From IMG/VR virus record IMGVR_UViG_3300017991_000048, positions 124,001 to 188,000 of that record: 64,000 bases of DNA; one strand, given 5' to 3'. The notes beneath the pieces are model-generated. The model did not search any database and was not told where the DNA came from. It saw only the letters and a list, made by a program, of their open reading frames with translations. Below are positions 518 through 34,544 of the stretch, piece after piece (the first letter of the stretch is position 1; each line of letters opens with the position of its first letter). Made by a program: the position numbers and the translations under genes.

Positions 518-916
518 ATGAGCTTACCTGAACGTATAGCCGAACGGTATCAAGCCGCCGCAGCCTCGAAATACGCCGTTATCCGTAAGGAAAAAGGCAA
601 ATACTGTGTCCGATCGCCCAACAACCCTGACTGGAATGGCGGATGTTTTGACTCAGAAGAAGAGGCCAAAAAACGGCTGCAACAGGTAGAGTTCTTCAAG
701 TCCAAAAAGGCATACTACTTAGAAGAAGACGATCCAGGCGATCCAAACGCTGATAAAGTCGAAATGGCACACGTCGTCGCACAAGCAGCCACCTCTTCCC
801 TAAAGAAACAAGTAGGGTACTTACGCGGTTTTCACATATCCCCTTCCGAACTTAGACGGTTTCAGAAAGTCATAGGGTCCGCTGTAGCCAAAGAGATTTG
901 GCGAATATGGCCTTAA
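518..916 (+). CDS. hypothetical protein with N-terminal RIAERY tag; putative internal virion protein
   Basis: N-terminus MSLPERIAERYQAAA followed by small domain IRKEKGKYCVRS...GCFDSEEEAKKRLQQVEFFK. Confidence 0.6.
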   Translation: MSLPERIAERYQAAAASKYAVIRKEKGKYCVRSPNNPDWNGGCFDSEEEAKKRLQQVEFFKSKKAYYLEEDDPGDPNADKVEMAHVVAQAATSSLKKQVGYLRGFHISPSELRRFQKVIGSAVAKEIWRIWP

Positions 917-11578: not shown

Positions 11579-11833
11579 ATGGCAAGCCTGGAAGCATACA
11601 AAGGCTTGTTAAAGCGTATCAAATGGCTGGCTGACGGGAACCCAGATCCAGATGAGTTCTTACAGTCTGTGCGGGGCGCTTTTGAGGATGATGAAAACGG
11701 AGTTTGGGAAGGTCTAATTGAACCGTCGCACAGAAATATAGTTCTGGAAGCGGCTATCGCTGAGATCAATTACCTAAAAGCTGAGATCGACCGGCTCAAA
11801 GAAAGATTAGCGGGAGTGCAATCTATAGACTAA
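11579..11833 (+). CDS. hypothetical protein
   Basis: Abuts upstream stop; coiled-coil C-terminus. Confidence 0.5.
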   Translation: MASLEAYKGLLKRIKWLADGNPDPDEFLQSVRGAFEDDENGVWEGLIEPSHRNIVLEAAIAEINYLKAEIDRLKERLAGVQSID

Positions 11834-12010
11834 TGTAGTTGTAAAAGGCCCACCGGTTGTTCTTACAAGAGTGTACCCATCGTTTTCTAGTTTCAGCTTC
11901 TTGCGCTCAGCTTTTTTAATACTCCCGGTATCATTCCAGTCCACCTTGACCAGTACTTCCTTAGCCGCTTGTTTCGCAAGAGCATTTTCAAACGCTTTTC
12001 TGGGATTCAT
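11807..12010 (-). CDS. small hypothetical protein
   Basis: GGAGG SD before ATG 12010. Confidence 0.5.
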   Translation of the reverse strand: MNPRKAFENALAKQAAKEVLVKVDWNDTGSIKKAERKKLKLENDGYTLVRTTGGPFTTTLVYRLHSR

Positions 12011-12021
12011 TTTGCCTCCAA

Positions 12022-12408
12022 TTACCGAAGCCGCCTCTTCAGTTCCTTTTTGATTTCCCTGGCTTCCGGACCTTTGAACCCACGGGCATTGGCTAGAAAA
12101 TAAGCCACAATCGAAGCGCCGGGGTCCATTCCATACATTGCATCATTTGGGTCCATTACGTTCAAGCTGTACATGGCTTGCAAGTAAGGCTTGGCACCGA
12201 AGTACACATTTCGCCAGAGGTCTGAAATCTCGTGGGCTATCTCAGAGAGGGTCATATGCCGGTAGTCCGATTGTGCTGTGCGAACGCGGTCAGCCAAAGC
12301 CATAAGCTTGGAAGCGATTTTTTCCCGACTGGGATGGGAGCTTTCAGCGTATCGGAGTAATGTTTGTAGCTCGTGAGCTAATTCTTCAGGTGTGGCTAGC
12401 TTTCTCAT
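12022..12408 (-). CDS. phage protein with shared 45-aa N-terminal leader
   Basis: Leader MRKLATPEELAHELQTLLRYA...LADRVRTA is homologous to the 12470 N-terminus; C-terminal domain EIAHEISDLWRNVYFGAKPYLQAM...YFLANA..FKG resembles a conserved small phage protein. Confidence 0.65.
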   Translation of the reverse strand: MRKLATPEELAHELQTLLRYAESSHPSREKIASKLMALADRVRTAQSDYRHMTLSEIAHEISDLWRNVYFGAKPYLQAMYSLNVMDPNDAMYGMDPGASIVAYFLANARGFKGPEAREIKKELKRRLR

Positions 12409-12469
12409 AGTCTGTTCCGTTCCTTTCACCAGCGTTTGTATCAAAAAAATACTTGTAAGCTGATAAGAT

Positions 12470-13183
12470 ATGGACAAAATTGCATCCCCCCGTGATTTGG
12501 CTTCAGAGCTAAAGAAACTTTTGGGTTACGCCGGTAGCCAATCTCCCAGTCGGGTCAAATTGGCAAACGATCTTCTGAGCTTAGCCAACCGTGTGGCTGT
12601 CGAAGGCCAGCACTGGAATTATTGGGATAAAAGCGCCCCTAGAACGCCGTGGGGGAGAGCGGATGCGGCTTACAATTTGGCAAGGGGCGTCACTTTTTAC
12701 GGTACGCCCTCCCACGGTGGTCTGAAAGTGTCAAGAGGGGCCGCAAGAAGTAAACTATCTCCAGCGGCAATAAAACAAGCGGATCAGTGGGGCGGAGCGT
12801 ATTGGTACGAAGAGGATGTGGCTATTGCGATCCCGTTATATGAAGTTCCCGAATGGAGGGAGCAGGCACGTCGAAAGATGGGCATGAAAAGTGAGTCAGA
12901 GCACAGTTTGGAACGAACAATCGAGAGATACTTTCCTGAATACTTCAAGCTCAAAGAAGAGAAGTACGAGTTGCCGCCTACCCCCAAAGTTGGCGAGATT
13001 TGGCAGTTTACCAAACCAGTTCAGTTCGGGTCTGGGTATGAGTTTGAAAAAGGCGACACCATTAGAATCTGGCGAGCTACTTCAGCAGGCGCTATCCAAT
13101 TCACGGCTGATCAGTACGGGCCAGTAAAGTTTAGACTGAGAGCATCGCAAGCCGACTACATCGAGCCATACAAGGGCAGGTAA
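12470..13183 (+). CDS. DUF7007-like protein with shared N-terminal leader
   Basis: Leader MDKIASPRDLASELKKLLGYA...LANRVA; core TPWG...GV.FYGTPSHGG..VS...WYEED. Confidence 0.6.
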   Translation: MDKIASPRDLASELKKLLGYAGSQSPSRVKLANDLLSLANRVAVEGQHWNYWDKSAPRTPWGRADAAYNLARGVTFYGTPSHGGLKVSRGAARSKLSPAAIKQADQWGGAYWYEEDVAIAIPLYEVPEWREQARRKMGMKSESEHSLERTIERYFPEYFKLKEEKYELPPTPKVGEIWQFTKPVQFGSGYEFEKGDTIRIWRATSAGAIQFTADQYGPVKFRLRASQADYIEPYKGR

Positions 13184-15983: not shown

Positions 15984-17699
15984 TCACGGAAACATCACTT
16001 CACACTCAAGCAACAGATCGGCACCTTTGTTGAAAGACTTAACCTTGGCTTTGAACCCGGACACTCCCCTGGTGTTCTTCTTTATGGAAGCTTCCATGAC
16101 CTTTTCAACAGCTTGACGGGCTTTACGAGCAGCGGTGGCGTCCTCAGAAGCTCCTTCGATGGTCAGATAAACAATGGGACCGGAGCCTGCTTTTGCGTCA
16201 GAGGAATAGCCCTCAACTTCAACTTTCTCAATTTCTTTTGCAAGGCTACGCATCCACTTTGCAAGCCACCCTTTATCTTTTTCCATTTCCGCCATTTGTG
16301 CCTCCAAATACCGATTGACAATCTGTTGGGCTGCGGTCTTTTTAGCCGCTGCTTTCGCTTGCCACCTCTGATAGTACTGCTTTTGTTGTGCCCACGGCAA
16401 CGACCGAACCTTGACCTGGGGAAACTGTTTCCGAGACTTTGGGTTGGGGTTCGGAACCATGCTATCCCCAACTTCACGAAGGAACCGCATCCGAGTTTTG
16501 TCTTTGTCAGGTTCTTTCTTCTTCGGCTCTTTCTCCGGTTCTGCCTTTTCCTTCGGCTTCTCTTTCTTTTTCTTGGGAGTCGCTCCTGTAGCTCTTTGGT
16601 GCGCCTCTTCATTCATGCTCTTCACAGCCGTGGCAATATCTCCCTCTTCCGGTTTCTTGGGCAAGCCGCTTAATGCATGACCGTATGAGGTAGGCTTATT
16701 TAGTTTATAAGGGGAAATAGCGTAAAGGATCTTATTGATCTCTTTTGTCGCTTTCTCTTTTTCATCTTCGGACATACCCGCGAGCTTGTTCATCAGGTCT
16801 TTGGCCTTGGCCCGAAGCTTACTGGCTTCTTCGGGCTTGTCGTGCGGCGGTCCTTTACGATAGTGGACGAAGTTATCGGGGGATGCTGATTGAATATCCT
16901 TCAGGGCCTCTTCATTTTTCTCGTACCAGTTAGAAATATCAAACTGGTCCACCATCCGTTTTCCCCGGACCTTGCCACGGGAAAGGTTAGATAGCTCCGT
17001 GTCAGCCTGTTCCGGGTGAAGGAAAATGACTGTAACCTCGTACCCGTTAGATTTGGCGTTATCGATCTGGCCTTTGAAGTCTTGAGCGTCAATATCTTCA
17101 CCAGCCGAGTCAACAATCAGTAAATCCTTGACCTTTTCTATCTTACTGCTAACCGACTCTTCAAACCGGTGACGGGCCTCATCTTTATAACGTTCTTTTG
17201 GTTTGCCCGTCTCTTCGTTCTTTTCTTTAGGATCATCATGCCAGCCACGCATGGACACATAGAAATCTTTGTTGGTTTTTCCGAAAAACTCATCGAAGTC
17301 ATCAGGGAAATCATCATGCCCTACGACTTTACTTAACTCTATACGCTCTCCGTCCTTGGTTTCATACCAGTGATCTGCCAACGCTTTCTTGAAAGTATCC
17401 TTGCCTTTTTCGTGGGCTTCTTTGAGAGCGTCAAAGTGTTTCTGAGCCTCTTCAAACTGGATAGCTCGCAAATGGTTATCTGACTCATCCTGCTCAGGAC
17501 GTTCTGGGATGTCCTCTTCTGTCAGTAAAGGGTTGCCTTCATCATCCACGAGCATCTGTGGCAACTTCCATCCGAACTTGGGTGGCGGCTCCCCTAAAAA
17601 GAAGCCTTTACCCGCTGCCGGTGGTCCCATCATTACCACCATTCGCTTCTTATCGCTTTTGGCGTTTAGATAACGAGCTATGATTCGCTGCCTATTCAT
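15984..17699 (-). CDS. P-loop kinase (zeta-toxin/AAA_33-like) multidomain protein with two RY tags
   Basis: VVMMGPPAAGKG, LIVDSAG, GYEVTVIFL, lid NLSRGKVRGKR; tags RIIARYLNA (N-terminal) and QIVNRYLEA (internal). Confidence 0.65.
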   Translation of the reverse strand: MNRQRIIARYLNAKSDKKRMVVMMGPPAAGKGFFLGEPPPKFGWKLPQMLVDDEGNPLLTEEDIPERPEQDESDNHLRAIQFEEAQKHFDALKEAHEKGKDTFKKALADHWYETKDGERIELSKVVGHDDFPDDFDEFFGKTNKDFYVSMRGWHDDPKEKNEETGKPKERYKDEARHRFEESVSSKIEKVKDLLIVDSAGEDIDAQDFKGQIDNAKSNGYEVTVIFLHPEQADTELSNLSRGKVRGKRMVDQFDISNWYEKNEEALKDIQSASPDNFVHYRKGPPHDKPEEASKLRAKAKDLMNKLAGMSEDEKEKATKEINKILYAISPYKLNKPTSYGHALSGLPKKPEEGDIATAVKSMNEEAHQRATGATPKKKKEKPKEKAEPEKEPKKKEPDKDKTRMRFLREVGDSMVPNPNPKSRKQFPQVKVRSLPWAQQKQYYQRWQAKAAAKKTAAQQIVNRYLEAQMAEMEKDKGWLAKWMRSLAKEIEKVEVEGYSSDAKAGSGPIVYLTIEGASEDATAARKARQAVEKVMEASIKKNTRGVSGFKAKVKSFNKGADLLLECEVMFP

Positions 17700-18351
17700 A
17701 TTGCTCCTTAAGTGCCTTTGCTCTCACCGCTCTATTAAGAACCTTACGAGTATCGTTGATGAGCTTATCAGGGTAATCAGGATCATCACCCATTTCAGCT
17801 TTCAGATCCTTGCCAAAAACTTCAACCTTCTTGGCAAGTGAACGAAGATGATCTCTTAAAGTGTTCTTCAATATTGGCTTTCCTTCGTCCCATGCCTTGA
17901 TTTGGGCTATTGTCCAGTCAATACCAAAAAACCCAGTCGTACCTTTGTCGAAATAGTGCCCCAAGTTAAATGATGTGAGCAAGGGGATAACCCGCTCTTC
18001 AAACTTTTCTAGTAGTTGACGAGTGTCTACTAATACAGCGGGGAGAGGTCCCATGTTAGCCTCTCCTTCGATCTTCAGTGTTGCCTTTACTTTAACAGAC
18101 CCGTCTCTATCCATGGTAAGAGACCCCTCTCCTGCAACTTTGCGCCCGTCTGTTGTGGCCATCTCAAGGGTAAAAGACCCTTTAGATTTCGGCTTGCACT
18201 TAATACTCCCTTTGGGTTCAGTGTTGTGCTTGTTCAATCTGAGCCACATGAGAATTTCATTACGAAAAGGCAAAAATTCATCGAATTCTATGCTGTCCTC
18301 TGTCGGCAGACCAGCGAAGCGTGTGACAACTCGATTTGTAATATCAGGCAT
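17692..18351 (-). CDS. hypothetical protein with N-terminal RVVTRF tag
   Basis: MPDITNRVVTRFAG; GAGGTG SD. Confidence 0.6.
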   Translation of the reverse strand: MPDITNRVVTRFAGLPTEDSIEFDEFLPFRNEILMWLRLNKHNTEPKGSIKCKPKSKGSFTLEMATTDGRKVAGEGSLTMDRDGSVKVKATLKIEGEANMGPLPAVLVDTRQLLEKFEERVIPLLTSFNLGHYFDKGTTGFFGIDWTIAQIKAWDEGKPILKNTLRDHLRSLAKKVEVFGKDLKAEMGDDPDYPDKLINDTRKVLNRAVRAKALKEQYE

Positions 18352-21225: not shown

Positions 21226-21501
21226 TTATTTCTTCTGCTCTTCCTTCTCGCGCCTTTTAGTTTCTTGCACATCCTCTGGAGACATTTTGCGGATTGTGTA
21301 AAGCCCCATGGTCCGATTCTTTTTACGTCCTTTGGGCACAGGCTCAATTTCTATGTAAGGGATACCCCTCTTGTCCAAGTATACCCTGACCACTTTGGCT
21401 CGTTTGTTCTTAAACTTGCCAAAAAGGACGTAATCCCCTGGTTTAAAATGTGCCGTCAGAAACCGGGCAGCTACCCGGTCAGATGAGACTTTTCGGTCCA
21501 T
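21226..21501 (-). CDS. small SH3/KOW-like protein with N-terminal RVAARF tag
   Basis: SSDRVAARFLTA followed by FKPGDYVLFGKFKNKRAKVVRV. Confidence 0.6.
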   Translation of the reverse strand: MDRKVSSDRVAARFLTAHFKPGDYVLFGKFKNKRAKVVRVYLDKRGIPYIEIEPVPKGRKKNRTMGLYTIRKMSPEDVQETKRREKEEQKK

Positions 21502-22531: not shown

Positions 22532-22759
22532 CTAGCCTATTAGATGATCCCAGAGAGTTTTTCTCGCGGCTCGCTTGAGAGGGATAATCAAAGTCGCTCC
22601 GTCAAGCATCTGATACAACAACTGTGTTTGTTCAGGATCAATCCAGGCACGATCAGCTTGACGAAGCGCCGTTAACCCTTCTGACGATACTCTTGACATA
22701 GGCACTGACATTTCAGGCTGATCGTGCCGGTCTTTAACTGTTTTCCATCCGGGCTTCAC
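22532..22759 (-). CDS. small hypothetical protein with C-terminal TLWDHL
   Basis: GTGA overlap; ends RKTLWDHLIG. Confidence 0.55.
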   Translation of the reverse strand: MKPGWKTVKDRHDQPEMSVPMSRVSSEGLTALRQADRAWIDPEQTQLLYQMLDGATLIIPLKRAARKTLWDHLIG

Positions 22760-23704: not shown

Positions 23705-24299
23705 TAAAACGATCTTTCATGTATTGGAAGCCCAGGTTTCCGACTTCCAAGGTTTCGGATTCCAAAGCTTCACTCAGAAGGATGGCCTCTGATAGAGGCA
23801 TGAGAACTTGTGCCGTTTCGAGACGTTCCAACTGATTTTGAAGGTTAATATTGAACTCTATGACGATCTCTGAGCCCTGTGTCAATCTTATGTTTTCGCT
23901 CAACTCATGGGGATGGCACAAAAGAGGATCGCCGGTTGAGAACGTAGCTCGACAATATAGCGGTCTTCTCTCGTATGCGACACACAACTTTTCTTCCAGC
24001 AGTGGGCATGGAATGTTGCTCAGTAGCCAAATGTCGAAGGACAACTTCAATGTTTTGTCCCGATCTGCTTTGAGCTTTTTCTGGAGAGAAGGCGTCCATT
24101 TACCACGCGCAGTCAAATGTCGATACAACAACAGCCCTTCAAGTATTGTGATGAGAAAAGGGTGGTGGCAGCAATAAGAGCAGCCTTTTGAACAGCTAAG
24201 AAGATTGGACCCCTGTCGCAACTGCTGCTCAAACTCTTGCCCCATCTGAGTTTGAAGAGCCTTGGTTTCGGCTAAAGCTTTCTCAAATGGAAGTTTCAT
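23697..24299 (-). CDS. YkgJ / CxxCxxCC Fe-S cluster family protein
   Basis: CSKGCSYCC and CPLL....C.AYERRPLYCR. Confidence 0.85.
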   Translation of the reverse strand: MKLPFEKALAETKALQTQMGQEFEQQLRQGSNLLSCSKGCSYCCHHPFLITILEGLLLYRHLTARGKWTPSLQKKLKADRDKTLKLSFDIWLLSNIPCPLLEEKLCVAYERRPLYCRATFSTGDPLLCHPHELSENIRLTQGSEIVIEFNINLQNQLERLETAQVLMPLSEAILLSEALESETLEVGNLGFQYMKDRFSD

Positions 24300-24793
24300 T
24301 CGTCTTCCAATAGATGGTCGTACAGGTTGGCGGAAGTCCTCTCCGGTGGCGGTCTTTCTCTCACTATCCTCTTCTGGCTCATTGGCTGAAAGTCTCTCGG
24401 TACTTTTATGGGAAAGTTCACCTCCCTGGTGAAAACCTGATACCGGAGAATAAGCTGATCACCGAAGCCCAACCGCAGTTCAGGGTTTAGGTAAAGCGTC
24501 CCGCCTATCTGGAATTCATCAATCTTGGCCCAGTCCAGGAGCCATTTTAAAATGACAACACCCCCAGAGGACGGCCTGTGGACTTCCAGCAACCGTCCTT
24601 TCCTTGGGGGTGTTGTAATAGCAGGCCAATCGCGGAGCGGGTTGCAGGGAATCGGGCAATCCGCTTCCACGCCTAGTATCTGTTTTTCTCTGTCCTGGGA
24701 TTCGATAAACGCCGTATCCGTAGCTGGATCTATTTTATGTACCAACCACAGCTTGGATTGTCGTTGTATCAAATCTCCAGTTTGGATTGCCAT
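24296..24793 (-). CDS. hypothetical protein with C-terminal NLYDHL
   Basis: Ends SANLYDHLLEDE; ATGA overlap. Confidence 0.55.
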   Translation of the reverse strand: MAIQTGDLIQRQSKLWLVHKIDPATDTAFIESQDREKQILGVEADCPIPCNPLRDWPAITTPPRKGRLLEVHRPSSGGVVILKWLLDWAKIDEFQIGGTLYLNPELRLGFGDQLILRYQVFTREVNFPIKVPRDFQPMSQKRIVRERPPPERTSANLYDHLLEDE

Positions 24794-25903: not shown

Positions 25904-26149
25904 TTATGATTCTTTGGTGTTAGGAAATTCCCGGTCCAAATCTACCTCATGGATAATGCCGAGTCTCCGGAGGTGCTGCTCTACCTGATTCGAACTTAAG
26001 GCTTTGCGTAATCCCTCAACTCTCCGGTCTTGACTCTTCTCGGCCCTCAGGATTGCTTGGCGTAATAACTTCTTCCAGCCGTCCTGACGGGTCGGCGGCT
26101 GAATCTGACGTTGAGATCTCTGCGGTTTCTGAATTAGGTGTACGGGCAT
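25904..26149 (-). CDS. hypothetical protein
   Basis: GAGG SD; overlaps the 3' end of 26016..26474 by 134 nt. Confidence 0.45.
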   Translation of the reverse strand: MPVHLIQKPQRSQRQIQPPTRQDGWKKLLRQAILRAEKSQDRRVEGLRKALSSNQVEQHLRRLGIIHEVDLDREFPNTKES

Positions 26150-26474
26150 TTTCTACCTCATTCAATAATCGGGCTTCTATCGAAAGAACCTGATCTAAGG
26201 GGATATCCATCCCGGTTGCAAACAGCCGTAAAAAGACTTGGCGTTGTGTTTCCAGCATGTTCCGTAAGGCTGTGTTCTCAGCTTCGGCCTTTTGTAACGC
26301 TTCGTTTGCAGCTTCCAACTGGATCATCAATTGGTCAATCTTTTCAAGCTCTGGCTTGATCCGTTGAGCCAGTTCAACGACCTCTTGGAGAGGTCCAAGT
26401 GCCGAAAGAATCTGGGTCAACTCTTTTGGTACAGGCTTTTTCTTCTCTTTCGCTCTACGGGTAGCTCGATTCAT
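26016..26474 (-). CDS. coiled-coil hypothetical protein
   Basis: GAGGA SD; MNRATRR start; heptad pattern. Confidence 0.55.
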   Translation of the reverse strand: MNRATRRAKEKKKPVPKELTQILSALGPLQEVVELAQRIKPELEKIDQLMIQLEAANEALQKAEAENTALRNMLETQRQVFLRLFATGMDIPLDQVLSIEARLLNEVENARTPNSETAEISTSDSAADPSGRLEEVITPSNPEGREESRPES

Positions 26475-26480
26475 TATTCC

Positions 26481-26879
26481 TCATTGAGAGAAAGGCGGCT
26501 GCCCACGAAAGACTGCATAGAACGGGATTGAGCCAGGATTGTTAGGCTGATTGAATTGTGCCTGTTCTGCGTCCATCCGCTCCACTACCGGGAGCCGTGG
26601 GGTGGTCCTGGCCAGTTCTAACAGGTGAGGGTCGGAGGTAATTCTTATCAGGTCTTGACGGGCTTTCTCGTCACGCTGGAGAATGTATATAATCTGACAA
26701 TCTTCCAGAGTATCAAGCATACAGACCCCTGGAGCATCCCCATCGGAAGGGCCGTCACCTCTTTCCACCCAAACATTGTCCGAGCCGGGAACGTACAAAT
26801 CACATCGGCTGGTGGGTGCTTCACATTCAGGCAGTTCAGGGCAGACACACGGGGAAGTTTGACAGCTAACACAAGACAT
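26481..26879 (-). CDS. Cys-rich hypothetical protein
   Basis: GAGGTG SD; N-terminal CVSC..PCVC. Confidence 0.55.
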   Translation of the reverse strand: MSCVSCQTSPCVCPELPECEAPTSRCDLYVPGSDNVWVERGDGPSDGDAPGVCMLDTLEDCQIIYILQRDEKARQDLIRITSDPHLLELARTTPRLPVVERMDAEQAQFNQPNNPGSIPFYAVFRGQPPFSQ

Positions 26880-28021: not shown

Positions 28022-28480
28022 CTATCTGAGAGGAAACTTCTTAGGTTTACGGACTTTCCTGAAACGGGTCTGCCGAACTTTGGGCCTGTACCCTCTTGAA
28101 ATTGGCTCCACGGTCATATCGAACTTCTTAGCAACCTGGGCCAACTCCGCCAAAGCCGTCCTCTCTGCTGTATCAACAGAGCCACCCTCGTCTACCGGGA
28201 CTTGCAGGTCCACCCGTGTTTCTGTGCGTAGGCCCTTTTCCTCATCAATCCGTGTCAGAAGACCCGATGATTGATGTCCGGTTACTTTCAAAAATATATC
28301 GTGGATCTCTCCGTCGTCGCCTATCACTGGCACAATGGTGCGATTGATAGCCCGAATAACATCGATGTTGAAAGGAATGAGCTTGCGCCCTTCCGCAAAT
28401 AAGACGCTCATCCTATCTACAGCATAGCTGAAGCCAGCAGTTTTGAGATAACGAGAAACAATCTGTTCTGCTGTTTTCAT
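28022..28480 (-). CDS. hypothetical protein with N-terminal QIVSRY tag
   Basis: GAGGA SD before ATG 28480: MKTAEQIVSRYLKTA. Confidence 0.6.
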   Translation of the reverse strand: MKTAEQIVSRYLKTAGFSYAVDRMSVLFAEGRKLIPFNIDVIRAINRTIVPVIGDDGEIHDIFLKVTGHQSSGLLTRIDEEKGLRTETRVDLQVPVDEGGSVDTAERTALAELAQVAKKFDMTVEPISRGYRPKVRQTRFRKVRKPKKFPLR

Positions 28481-28487
28481 AGTATCC

Positions 28488-29303
28488 TCAACGCCACACT
28501 GAGAAATGAGTGTCATATCCGATCTTGTTTTTCTTCAGCCACTCGTCAAACTTGGACCAACTCACATTTTTAAGAACTGTAGGATCGGCGTTTACTATTT
28601 TATAGAGCTTACGGGCTGCTGTTGGCGATGTTGACCCGTAATAAGTATAGTGAGGATCGGCCTGTTGGAAATCGGAACTAGGGCTATACGCTTTGAAGCC
28701 GGTCCACTTGGACATAAAGCTAAAGTCTTTGCCCTCAACTTCTATGGGATCTACATCCTCTGGGACTATGTTAAGATAAAACTCTGTTCTTTCGTGCCAA
28801 TCTTCTTTGCGAAGCCACTCTACATTTTCCTCTGAAACCCCTTTCTCAACACATCTGTCAGCCGCTTTTTCATAAGCGTCCAAAATCTTCTTTTTGATCC
28901 TTTCGTAGTTATCAGAGGAACTCAACTTTGCATCTCGAAGTATGTTTGAAGCGATGAAAGGATCAAACTCACCCATACCTCGACTACTGGGGTTCATCAA
29001 ATCCGCTACTTTGAGCTTTTTCTTACCTTTCTGGGGGAGTTCTTCTAAGAGCCATGTAGTTCTGCTCCAACGTAAGCGAGCATCACGACCCATAAACTTG
29101 CCATCCCAGTCATCCCAACGTCCAGTTCTCCCCTGGAAACGGGCCACAACTCGTTCAGCAGCCTCTTTGAACCGGTCCTTGTTCTTCTGATGCTCTTCGC
29201 GCCACTTCTTGGCGTCTTCAGGACTCATGTTTTCAGTGGGATCAGCGGGTTTACCCTCTTCAAACCGTGAAACTACATCTTCGCTTCGTTGCTCCGTCGC
29301 CAT
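28488..29303 (-). CDS. hypothetical protein with two RF tags
   Basis: AGGAG SD; SEDVVSRFEE and AERVVARFQG. Confidence 0.6.
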   Translation of the reverse strand: MATEQRSEDVVSRFEEGKPADPTENMSPEDAKKWREEHQKNKDRFKEAAERVVARFQGRTGRWDDWDGKFMGRDARLRWSRTTWLLEELPQKGKKKLKVADLMNPSSRGMGEFDPFIASNILRDAKLSSSDNYERIKKKILDAYEKAADRCVEKGVSEENVEWLRKEDWHERTEFYLNIVPEDVDPIEVEGKDFSFMSKWTGFKAYSPSSDFQQADPHYTYYGSTSPTAARKLYKIVNADPTVLKNVSWSKFDEWLKKNKIGYDTHFSVWR

Positions 29304-30735: not shown

Positions 30736-31155
30736 TTACCCGAATATAGCTGTGATGTCGTACTTGTCTAAAGGATCGTCCACCGAACCGGCACCCGCCG
30801 CTGTGATCGTCCCGTAGATGGTGTCAGGACGTCCTCTTTGGTTAGTAAAAGGTATCTCAAATGTCCAGGTTTTGCTTGTGGGCATCTGTTGGCGATGATA
30901 GGGACCAGGGGCGTATTCCCGTGGGATTATATACTCTTCGTCGGTTAGCGTGAAAGGGATACCCTCTTTACGAAGTACATCAAAAATGCGATTAATCCCT
31001 ACCCAACTCTGGTCACTGTAAATGCCACGTGTGTACCTTTGGGTGAGCTTGTAAAGGTAATTGGTAGCCTTTTGTTTCCGCATCCCATCTAATGGGTTTG
31101 GAAGCTCCAGAGCAGCTTTATAACGAGTTACGATTCGGTCAGTTCTTGTGCCCAT
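30736..31155 (-). CDS. hypothetical protein with N-terminal RIVTRY tag
   Basis: MGTRTDRIVTRYKAA from ATG 31155. Confidence 0.6.
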   Translation of the reverse strand: MGTRTDRIVTRYKAALELPNPLDGMRKQKATNYLYKLTQRYTRGIYSDQSWVGINRIFDVLRKEGIPFTLTDEEYIIPREYAPGPYHRQQMPTSKTWTFEIPFTNQRGRPDTIYGTITAAGAGSVDDPLDKYDITAIFG

Positions 31156-31178
31156 GCCTTTATGAAAACACAAAAACT

Positions 31179-34196: not shown

Positions 34197-34544
34197 TTAA
34201 ATCAAACGGCCTAGCGTTTCACCTAGATGTTGCCACAGTCGTTGCATTTCTTTTTCCAGGTCTTTAACAGCGCCCCGGAAATTCTTTGACTCCCCGCTTA
34301 TTCCTAAATAGGTCGCTTCAAAATACCCCGTCTTTTTCTCCACCACTATATCATCCATCCTGCCGACCTCTGGATCAGCATAGCCATAAAACACATTCAC
34401 ATCTTTGTCTTTCATCAGGCTGGTACGGACTGGTATGTGCCATAGAGGGTAGTTTGGGTTATCGGACCCTCTTTCCACTCTCAGTTTTTTACCACCGACC
34501 GTAATGGTCTTTGGGATATAACCCCATCGAGTATTCTTTTTCAT
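34197..34544 (-). CDS. hypothetical protein, paralog of 9077..9376
   Basis: IPKTITVGGKK...F.GAVKDLEKEMQRLWQHLG; ATGA overlap. Confidence 0.6.
   Translation of the reverse strand: MKKNTRWGYIPKTITVGGKKLRVERGSDNPNYPLWHIPVRTSLMKDKDVNVFYGYADPEVGRMDDIVVEKKTGYFEATYLGISGESKNFRGAVKDLEKEMQRLWQHLGETLGRLI

What the first reader, a model, noticed from the sequence alone, without database searches (positions are those of the whole stretch)
12022..13183. Divergent gene pair sharing a homologous ~43-aa leader fused to unrelated domains
Seen: MRKLATPEELAHELQTLLRYAESSHPSREKIASKLMALADRVRTA (12408, minus) aligns without gaps to MDKIASPRDLASELKKLLGYAGSQSPSRVKLANDLLSLANRVA (12470, plus). After it the two proteins are unrelated (a small conserved phage domain versus a DUF7007-like domain). 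The leader itself has an internal repeat (K-[LI]-A...L..L twice) and ends in RVRTA/RVA, echoing the short tag. Inference: a second, longer form of targeting propeptide grafted onto captured genes.
Basis: partly seen in the sequence, partly recalled or inferred. Interest (0 to 1): 0.62.

Follow-up and report, generated by a model that had tools for sequence, protein, structure and literature searches.

The report
Swappable helical tag on megaphage proteins
Two back-to-back genes of a 398-kb phage related to phage G start with the same 44-residue two-helix module joined to unrelated domains; it belongs to a large undescribed family of swappable end tags that probably deliver small proteins to one shared partner, most plausibly the assembling phage head.

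Summary
P0001 (window 12025-12408, minus) and P0002 (12470-13180, plus) share 23 of 42 N-terminal residues without gaps (E 7e-12) and nothing else. The genome has seven such proteins. Close relatives (capsid protein 88-99% identical) have 1 to 14. A profile search of 1.84 billion proteins finds 706 cluster representatives.

The module is a confident two-helix hairpin (pLDDT 89). It sits at residues 1-45 in 173 of 178 proteins examined and is fused to at least 136 unrelated cargo clusters. It matches no Pfam, PHROG or PDB family. Both cargo domains of the pair occur elsewhere without it, so "grafted" is right.

"Targeting" has only indirect support. Homologous cargo carries this module in one phage and a different short N-terminal tag in another. 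One copy lies in an array of tagged genes beside the major capsid gene. A conserved protein of the head gene block holds a hairpin like the module.

"Propeptide" has no support. No cleavage motif follows the module, no head protease was found, and some proteins carry the module at the C-terminus or in tandem.

Best reading: a position-tolerant docking tag, most likely for loading cargo into the procapsid. Function is inferred, not shown.

The parts
12025..12408 (-). P0001 coding sequence, 128 aa (stop codon at 12022-12024): leader plus a small helical cargo domain
12277..12408 (-). Leader module of P0001, residues 1-44 (MRKLATPEEL...LADRVRT): predicted helix 7-21, loop, helix 28-45
   Evidence: AlphaFold2 model pLDDT 89
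12034..12261 (-). Cargo domain of P0001, residues 50-125, matching phrog_13953. Elsewhere it is mostly a stand-alone protein of 76-90 aa
12409..12469 (.). 61-bp divergent intergenic region between the two start codons. No sigma-70-like promoter was found in it
12470..13183 (+). P0002 coding sequence, 237 aa plus stop codon: leader, DUF7007 domain and an SH3-like C-terminal domain
12470..12601 (+). Leader module of P0002, residues 1-44 (MDKIASPRDL...LANRVAV): predicted helix 7-21, loop, helix 28-42
12641..12952 (+). DUF7007 domain of P0002, residues 58-161
   Evidence: 65.9 bits against a cut-off of 27; homologs
12998..13168 (+). C-terminal beta domain of P0002, residues 177-233, with a weak SH3-like fold match
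   Evidence: Foldseek E about 4e-3, TM by target 0.63-0.75
11807..12010 (-). Neighbouring 67-aa gene that carries a different N-terminal tag (MNPRKAFENAL). It shows that tagged genes cluster together

Best explanation
The shared leader is a self-contained two-helix hairpin domain of about 44 residues. Its consensus is MxKIASPxELxxELRRLLAYxxxxxPSRxxLAxxLxxLAxRVA. In phage G-like megaphages it works as a modular docking tag: it is recombined onto many unrelated small cargo domains and brings them to one conserved partner. Shown here: the fold prediction, the family size, the near-exclusive terminal position, the cargo diversity, the protein-level selection, and the interchange with other tags. 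Inferred: the partner is most likely inside the assembling procapsid, either the inner shell surface or the conserved helical protein P0200 encoded beside the capsid gene. Cargo would then be packed with the DNA and delivered into the next host. This would resemble cargo loading by the T4 capsid targeting sequence or by the helix-turn-helix of the P22 scaffolding protein. Cleavage of the tag is not required by the data and is not supported. P0001 and P0002 would be two such cargo proteins of unknown activity.
For: The genome has seven copies, all starting at Met1. Five relatives with 88-99% identical capsid protein have 1 to 14 copies. A profile search gives 706 cluster representatives at E<=1e-3 and 514 at E<=1e-10. 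In 173 of 178 proteins the module lies at residues 1-45, and the cargo falls into 136 clusters, 115 of them singletons. Charged and polar residues are nearly invariant across saturated divergence: K3 95%, E13 95%, S27 95%, R28 100%, R41 89%. That pattern suggests a conserved binding interface. AlphaFold2 predicts a hairpin in both the isolated module and the P0002 model (pLDDT 89 and 93.5). Tags swap on homologous cargo. The G003 leader protein, residues 45-234, is 50% identical (E 2e-63) to a G000 protein that starts MYSYDHRKTAYRP instead. Further swaps involve the NPRKAFE, YSYK and VVSRF tags. The leader gene at genome 300667-301176 lies in an array of tagged small genes between P0200 and the capsid gene. 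That capsid gene matches phage G gp27, PDB 6wkk, at E 1e-63. P0200 homologs lie 2-6 kb from the capsid gene in all five relatives. P0200 has an internal leader-like hairpin (hhalign 74%), and its last 38 residues are 89% identical to the N-terminal tag of another protein. Precedents exist: the T4 capsid targeting sequence (PMC5694885), the P22 scaffold helix-turn-helix that anchors to the procapsid and is used to load cargo (PMC9965877, PMC9962691), and phage G particle proteomics that detect many enzymes (PMC12484599). A DUF7007 homolog lies near an ArdC-N/MPTase-PolyVal gene. ArdC belongs to the class of proteins transferred together with mobile DNA (PMC5512222).
Against: There is no direct evidence that any leader protein is in a virion. 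Six of the seven G000 copies lie far from the head genes, among small genes that look early or accessory. No cleavage motif and no head protease were found. P0200 has no annotated function, so calling it a scaffold is inference from gene position and composition. Its hairpin match is moderate. Another tag of this genome sits on a tRNA nucleotidyltransferase, which is not an obvious virion protein. Hairpin fold matches are generic.
Confidence: 0.42

Rival explanations
1. The hairpin is a self-association module. Two hairpins pair into a four-helix bundle, which dimerises small effector domains in the cytoplasm or links different ones together. No targeting is involved.
For: Some proteins carry two copies. 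P0051 and P0061 have one at each end, and P0099 has a C-terminal tandem pair. An isolated two-helix hairpin usually needs a partner surface. The best fold matches include dimerisation hairpins such as CsoR, GLD-1 and CheA.
Against: The homodimer prediction gave no verdict, so it counts neither way. The fold matches are generic. Self-association does not explain why short, non-helical tags replace the hairpin on homologous cargo. It also does not explain the near-exclusive N-terminal position.
Confidence: 0.25
2. The hairpin docks cargo onto some other hub: a host machine such as RNA polymerase, the ribosome or the membrane, or a phage-built intracellular compartment.
For: The surface-exposed residues are conserved. 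Most copies lie among small accessory genes. Other tags of the genome sit on a tRNA nucleotidyltransferase and on an ORF whose N-terminus shows a HAD-phosphatase-like DFDG motif (recognised by eye only), which points to intracellular work.
Against: No candidate hub was identified. The links to P0200 and to the capsid-adjacent gene array favour the head.
Confidence: 0.2
3. The leader is a ribbon-helix-helix-like DNA-binding domain, so these proteins are a family of transcription regulators with variable sensor domains.
For: The pattern 'PxELxxELxxL...SRxxL' superficially resembles CopG/Arc-type motifs. This is a resemblance from memory, a lead only.
Against: No ribbon-helix-helix family appears in Pfam even at E<=1. 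The profile search of PDB sequences finds none. AlphaFold2 predicts an antiparallel hairpin with no strand. Only about five residues precede helix 1.
Confidence: 0.05
4. The similarity is a chance match, a full-length paralogy, or a conserved DNA or RNA regulatory element at the 5' ends of the genes.
For: None beyond the first impression that the two genes are adjacent.
Against: The leader match has E 7e-12 and nothing after it is similar. There are hundreds of family members. Third codon positions are randomised while second positions are conserved. The upstream regions share no motif on visual comparison.
Confidence: 0.01

Closest known systems
T4 capsid targeting sequence (CTS) on the internal proteins IPI, IPII, IPIII and Alt; the identical N-termini of SPN3US gp53/gp54
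   Same: A conserved N-terminal tag on otherwise unrelated or diverged proteins, several per genome in a large phage. In T4 it is enough to load foreign cargo into the head (PMC5694885).
   Different: The T4 tag is 10-20 residues long and ends in a protease site (L/I-x-E). The leader here is a folded hairpin of 44 residues with no conserved cleavage motif. It sometimes sits at the C-terminus or in tandem, and no prohead protease was found. There is no sequence similarity.
C-terminal helix-turn-helix of the P22 scaffolding protein gp8 (residues about 268-303), which binds the coat protein
   Same: Two amphipathic helices joined by a short turn, of similar size. It anchors to the inner procapsid surface, and cargo fused to it is encapsidated (PMC9965877, PMC9962691). 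A leader-like hairpin lies inside P0200, a protein of the head gene block.
   Different: No detectable sequence homology: the PDB profile search finds nothing. The fold match is generic. The P22 element is part of the scaffold itself, whereas here the module is copied onto at least 136 cargo types.
Polymorphic effector and polyvalent-protein logic: a conserved trafficking module joined to variable effector domains (Iyer et al. 2017, PMC5512222)
   Same: A constant terminal module with hypervariable cargo. Cargo types overlap the gene neighbourhoods of mobile elements: a DUF7007 homolog lies near an ArdC-N/MPTase-PolyVal gene, and one G000 cargo has a sub-threshold YodL-like hit.
   Different: The proteins here are small and carry one cargo each, rather than being giant multidomain proteins. 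No MuF or portal fusion is present. No toxin or enzyme domain was recognised in 148 members.
Encapsulation peptides of bacterial microcompartments and cargo-loading peptides of encapsulins
   Same: Short terminal helical tags, at the N- or C-terminus and followed by a variable linker, that recruit diverse cargo into a protein shell. This comparison rests on general knowledge.
   Different: A different shell system with no homology. Those tags are single helices or short linear motifs.

Membership tests
T4-type capsid targeting sequence / cleaved head propeptide | A conserved tag at the extreme N-terminus of otherwise unrelated proteins | tested here: met
   In 173 of 178 family members the module lies at residues 1-45. 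Post-leader regions are unrelated. Exceptions with C-terminal or tandem copies exist.
T4-type capsid targeting sequence / cleaved head propeptide | A conserved prohead-protease cleavage motif at the end of the tag (for example L/I-x-E or A/S/G-x-E) | tested here: not met
   After R41-V42-A43, position 44 is Gly or Ala in 102 of 173 proteins. Later positions show no conserved residue and no Glu motif.
T4-type capsid targeting sequence / cleaved head propeptide | A prohead maturation protease encoded by the phage | tested here: inconclusive
   PF03420, PF04586, PF14550 and PF00574 find nothing in the genome. A divergent protease cannot be excluded.
T4-type capsid targeting sequence / cleaved head propeptide | The tagged proteins are found in virions, with the tag removed | not testable with these tools
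   The phage is uncultivated and comes from a sediment metagenome. No RNA or proteome data are available.
P22-like scaffold helix-turn-helix that binds the coat protein | Two amphipathic helices joined by a short turn, about 35-45 residues in all | tested here: met
   AlphaFold2 predicts helix 7-21, a six-residue loop and helix 28-45 (pLDDT 89). Both helices show heptad-like spacing of hydrophobic residues.
P22-like scaffold helix-turn-helix that binds the coat protein | Sequence or specific structural homology to a known scaffold helix-turn-helix | tested here: not met
   The PDB profile search gives no relevant hit. Foldseek and VIA-align return only generic hairpins, with Z of 6 or less.
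P22-like scaffold helix-turn-helix that binds the coat protein | The element belongs to the phage's scaffolding protein and binds the capsid interior | tested here: inconclusive
   P0200, encoded beside the capsid gene in six phages, has a leader-like hairpin (hhalign 74%). Its role as a scaffold is inferred only.
Ribbon-helix-helix DNA-binding domain | An N-terminal beta strand followed by two helices that form an intertwined dimer, detectable by ribbon-helix-helix profiles | tested here: not met
   No Pfam ribbon-helix-helix hit at E<=1. No PDB hit. The predicted structure is an antiparallel hairpin with no strand. The dimer job gave no verdict.
Pfam DUF7007 (cargo of P0002) | A score above Pfam's gathering threshold | tested here: met
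   65.9 bits against a cut-off of 27, residues 58-161. The invariant core PWG...HGG...EED is shared with P0005-P0013.
phrog_13953 (cargo of P0001) | A significant match to the family profile | tested here: met
   E 1e-19, residues 50-125 against profile positions 62-134. The cargo is 50-55% identical to proteins of Gordonia phages.

The most novel reading that the evidence does not exclude
Phage G-like megaphages may run a virus-encoded protein-sorting code. It would consist of several interchangeable terminal tags: this 44-residue hairpin, the N-terminal RV[AV]xR[FY], MNPRKAFE, MxYSYDxR, MDxxRWK and MTYDRRY tags, and a C-terminal LWDHL tag. By my rough count about 90 of the roughly 560 predicted proteins carry one. 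The tags would be derived from segments of a hub or scaffold protein encoded in the head gene block, and different tags would send cargo to different destinations or loading steps.
Probability: 0.2. Interest if true: 0.85.

Novelty: new variant of a known kind. Interest (0 to 1): 0.62.

Why it matters
If the hairpin is a cargo-loading tag, it marks which proteins of uncultivated megaphages are packed into the head and injected. That would flag hundreds of unknown small domains as candidate early-acting effectors. It would also give a natural, compact tag for loading proteins into very large capsids. Whatever its function, it is a sizeable domain family (706 cluster representatives) absent from Pfam and PHROGs. 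The way it swaps with other short tags on homologous cargo shows an unusually modular way of building proteins in giant phages.

Tried and rejected
- **Homodimer prediction.** The job on the leader (two copies, alignment A3) scored 0.17 against a mark of 0.42. The tool returned no verdict, so it is not evidence either way.
- **Structure and sequence look-ups for the leader.** A PDB sequence search with the leader profile found nothing relevant. Foldseek against the PDB, VIA-align wide and the ESM Atlas returned only generic helical hairpins.
- **Word-index protein search on the leader.** It found one outside relative. This was a sensitivity limit, since the exhaustive profile search found 706.
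- **Other collections.** GenBank phages gave no leader match. The pattern scan of GTDB genomes gave none, but it is a low-sensitivity method.
- **Family scans of 148 members.** Pfam and PHROG scans gave almost nothing for the cargo.
- **Regulatory signals.** Upstream regions and a promoter and terminator scan showed no shared motif.
- **Sequencing runs.** No RNA sequencing run holds the locus.
- **Alignment A4.** P0001 plus cargo homologs was misaligned by MAFFT and was not used for folding.
- **Ribbon-helix-helix idea.** Considered and rejected; see the rival explanations.
- **C-terminal LWDHL tag as a DNA motif.** Rejected, because synonymous codon positions vary.
- **Other notes.** No other genetic code was used.

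Full report
**Setting.** The window is bases 124001-188000 of a single 398,071-bp virus record with direct terminal repeats and 48% GC. The only run holding the whole stretch is a sediment metagenome, probably the sample the record was assembled from. The record encodes phage replication proteins. Its major capsid protein, at genome 305834-306712, matches phage G gp27 (PDB 6wkk) over its full length at E 1e-63. So this is a megaphage related to phage G. Five IMG/VR records of 241-448 kb, called G001-G005 here, have capsid proteins 88-99% identical to it.

**Observation.**
- P0001 is window 12025-12408 (minus strand), 128 aa.
- P0002 is window 12470-13180 (plus strand), 237 aa.
- Their start codons are 61 bp apart.
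- BLASTP aligns residues 1-42 without gaps, 23/42 identical, E 7e-12. Nothing after that is significantly similar.
- P0001 residues 50-125 match phrog_13953. P0002 residues 58-161 match DUF7007.
- The AlphaFold2 model of P0002 (pLDDT 93.5) adds a weakly SH3-like C-terminal domain.

**Extent of the family.**
- A profile of the two leaders finds five more ORFs in this genome, each with the module starting at Met1. They lie at genome 33294-33653, 26712-27293, 300667-301176 and 25225-25662, plus a shortened form at 24220-24540 that lacks helix 1.
- Their post-leader parts are unrelated to one another.
- Conservation is at the protein level. Third codon positions are 16-58% identical and second positions 60-84%, with dS saturated. 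These are old duplications under purifying selection, not a DNA-level element.
- The relatives G001-G005 carry 1, 14, 1, 3 and 1 copies.
- An exhaustive profile search of 1.84 billion cluster representatives gives 706 hits at E<=1e-3 and 514 at E<=1e-10.
- Of 178 proteins examined, 173 have the module at residues 1-45.
- Their cargo (median 92 aa) falls into 136 BLAST clusters, 115 of them singletons. Almost none is known to Pfam or PHROGs.
- The module matches no Pfam, PHROG or PDB sequence family. It was not found in GenBank phages.

**Anatomy of the module.**
- AlphaFold2 (pLDDT 89) predicts six extended residues, helix 7-21, a six-residue loop and helix 28-45. The same hairpin appears in the full P0002 model.
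- Near-invariant positions are M1, K3, I4, A5, P7, L10, E13, L14, P26, S27, R28 (100%), A32, L35, L38, A39 and R41.
- Both helices have heptad-like spacing of hydrophobic residues. The conserved charged residues suggest a specific interface.
- The two halves resemble each other only weakly (SPxxLxxELxxL against SRxxLAxELxxL; hhalign probability 34%).
- Nothing is conserved after R41-V42-A43 and a Gly or Ala at position 44.

**Is it grafted?** Yes.
- Most of the 35 homologs of P0001's cargo are stand-alone proteins of 76-90 aa.
- Phage DSL-LC05 has an 80-aa version, and Gordonia phage MinecraftSteve gp96 carries a different N-terminal domain.
- DUF7007 homologs mostly lack the leader or have other N-termini. 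The ortholog in G002 keeps the leader.

**Is it an obligate N-terminal propeptide?** Probably not.
- P0099 has two tandem copies at its C-terminus, neither starting with Met. Its cargo is homologous to that of L010 and L028, where the module is N-terminal.
- P0051 (from G002) and P0061 carry one copy at each end. The C-terminal copy of P0051 matches the leader profile with hhalign probability 93.8%.
- No cleavage motif follows the module.
- Four Pfam models of head or Clp proteases find nothing in the genome.

**Evidence on function.**
- *Several tag families.* The genome holds other short N-terminal tags on otherwise unrelated proteins: RV[AV]xR[FY] (17 proteins), MNPRKAFE (8, one of them the gene next to P0001), MxYSYDxR (8), MDxxRWK (3) and MTYDRRY (2). 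About 53 ORFs end in a C-terminal LWDHL tag.
- *Tags swap on homologous cargo.* The leader protein of G003, residues 45-234, is 50% identical (E 2e-63) to G000 protein 300022-300651, which starts MYSYDHRKTAYRP instead. Other leader proteins match G000 proteins that carry YSYK, NPRKAFE or VVSRF tags. Paralogs within G000 also differ only in their tag. This is the strongest argument that these tags form one functional class.
- *Position next to the capsid gene.* The leader gene at about 300.7 kb sits in a 9-kb array of tagged small genes between P0200 (294865-296484) and the capsid gene.
- *A candidate hub.* P0200 is a 539-aa acidic protein (24% Ala plus Glu) with no known family. Its homolog lies 2-6 kb from the capsid gene in all five relatives. 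It contains an internal leader-like hairpin (hhalign 74%). Its last 38 residues are 89% identical to the N-terminal tag of another G000 protein.
- *No built-in scaffold.* The capsid protein aligns with phage G gp27 from residue 1, so it has no N-terminal scaffolding (delta) domain and needs a separate scaffold. P0200 is a candidate by position and composition only.

**Published precedents.**
- The T4 capsid targeting sequence loads the internal proteins and foreign cargo into the head. The paralogs SPN3US gp53 and gp54 share identical N-termini (PMC5694885).
- The C-terminal helix-turn-helix of the P22 scaffolding protein anchors to the inner procapsid surface and is used to load fused cargo (PMC9965877, PMC9962691).
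- Particle proteomics of phage G detect many non-structural enzymes (PMC12484599).
- Phages and plasmids deliver effector proteins together with their DNA (PMC5512222). A DUF7007 homolog lies near an ArdC-N/MPTase-PolyVal gene.

**Verdict.** The module is a new, large family of hairpin domains used as a swappable tag. The best-supported mechanism is docking to a common partner, most likely in the procapsid (confidence about 0.4). Rivals are plain self-association and targeting to some other hub. Every functional statement is inference. The predicted homodimer gave no verdict, and no expression or proteome data exist.

**Not done.** Read laying was not used. No alternative genetic code was used.

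Noticed in passing
Genome 22-104 kb (outside the window; L001 holds examples). In the window: 22532-22759 (minus strand) ends ...KTLWDHLIG, and possibly 34197-34544 (minus strand): About 53 ORFs end in a C-terminal tag [TDN]-L-W-[DE]-H-[LV] followed by 1-10 residues. The motif occurs 58 times in ORF tails and 11 times in 254,000 body residues. Synonymous codon positions vary, so it is a protein-level tag. Relative G001 has 42 DNA-pattern hits, while G002-G005 have 0-1. None of the seven leader proteins carries this tag.
   Followed up: partly
Window 17692-18351 (-), 21226-21501 (-), 518-916 (+), 28022-28516 (-), 28488-29303 (-), 30736-31173 (-); elsewhere in the genome, for example 248288-249712: Seventeen proteins carry a short N-terminal tag RV[AV]xR[FY], for example MDRKVSSDRVAARFL. 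One tagged protein is a tRNA nucleotidyltransferase (phrog_2244, E 2e-57), whose enzyme domain starts at residue 41.
   Followed up: partly
Window 11807-12010 (-); genome 249901-250653, 251198-251554, 267774-268939, 273204-273874, 371205-371492: Eight proteins start with MNPRKAFE(E/N)A(L/I). The A-F-E would fit the A-x-E cleavage motif of giant-phage prohead proteases described for SPN3US. This is a resemblance only.
   Followed up: no
Genome 26134-26699, 107719-108339, 263684-265367, 298380-302828, 310226-310758, 381881-389196: There are further N-terminal tags: MxYSYDxR (8 proteins), MDxxRWK (3) and MTYDRRY (2). Paralogs differ only in which tag they carry, for example 300022-300651 against 302493-302828, and 263916-265367 against 93733-95981.
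   Followed up: partly
Genome 294865-296484 (-) = L041:2868-4484: P0200 is a 539-aa acidic protein with no Pfam, PHROG or PDB match. It is conserved next to the capsid gene in all six phages. Its C-terminal module of about 45 aa is repeated several times in the relatives, and it holds an internal leader-like hairpin. It is a candidate scaffold or hub protein.
   Followed up: partly
Genome 305834-306712 (-) = L057:837-1712: The major capsid protein is homologous to phage G gp27 (PDB 6wkk, E 1e-63) and aligns from residue 1, so it has no N-terminal scaffolding (delta) domain. This places the phage among relatives of phage G.
   Followed up: yes
P0012, P0013 (DUF7007 homologs) and genome 24220-24540: Some proteins carry only the second helix of the module. 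The clearest is the G000 protein at 24220-24540 (MKKIAESPNPSRQELASSLKKLARRI). P0013 (MNRDKVASELVRLAKEL) is a looser, by-eye likeness, and P0012 weaker still. This suggests half-modules or decay of the tag.
   Followed up: no
L010:2654-3121, L028:1096-1629, P0099 and eight other proteins of that cluster: The most common cargo (11 of 175 proteins) is an uncharacterised domain with the motif 'LRDGDWGL...GD.V.V', followed in L010, L028 and P0099 by a Gly/Ser linker and a Cys-rich segment. It occurs with the module either in front of it or behind it.
   Followed up: no
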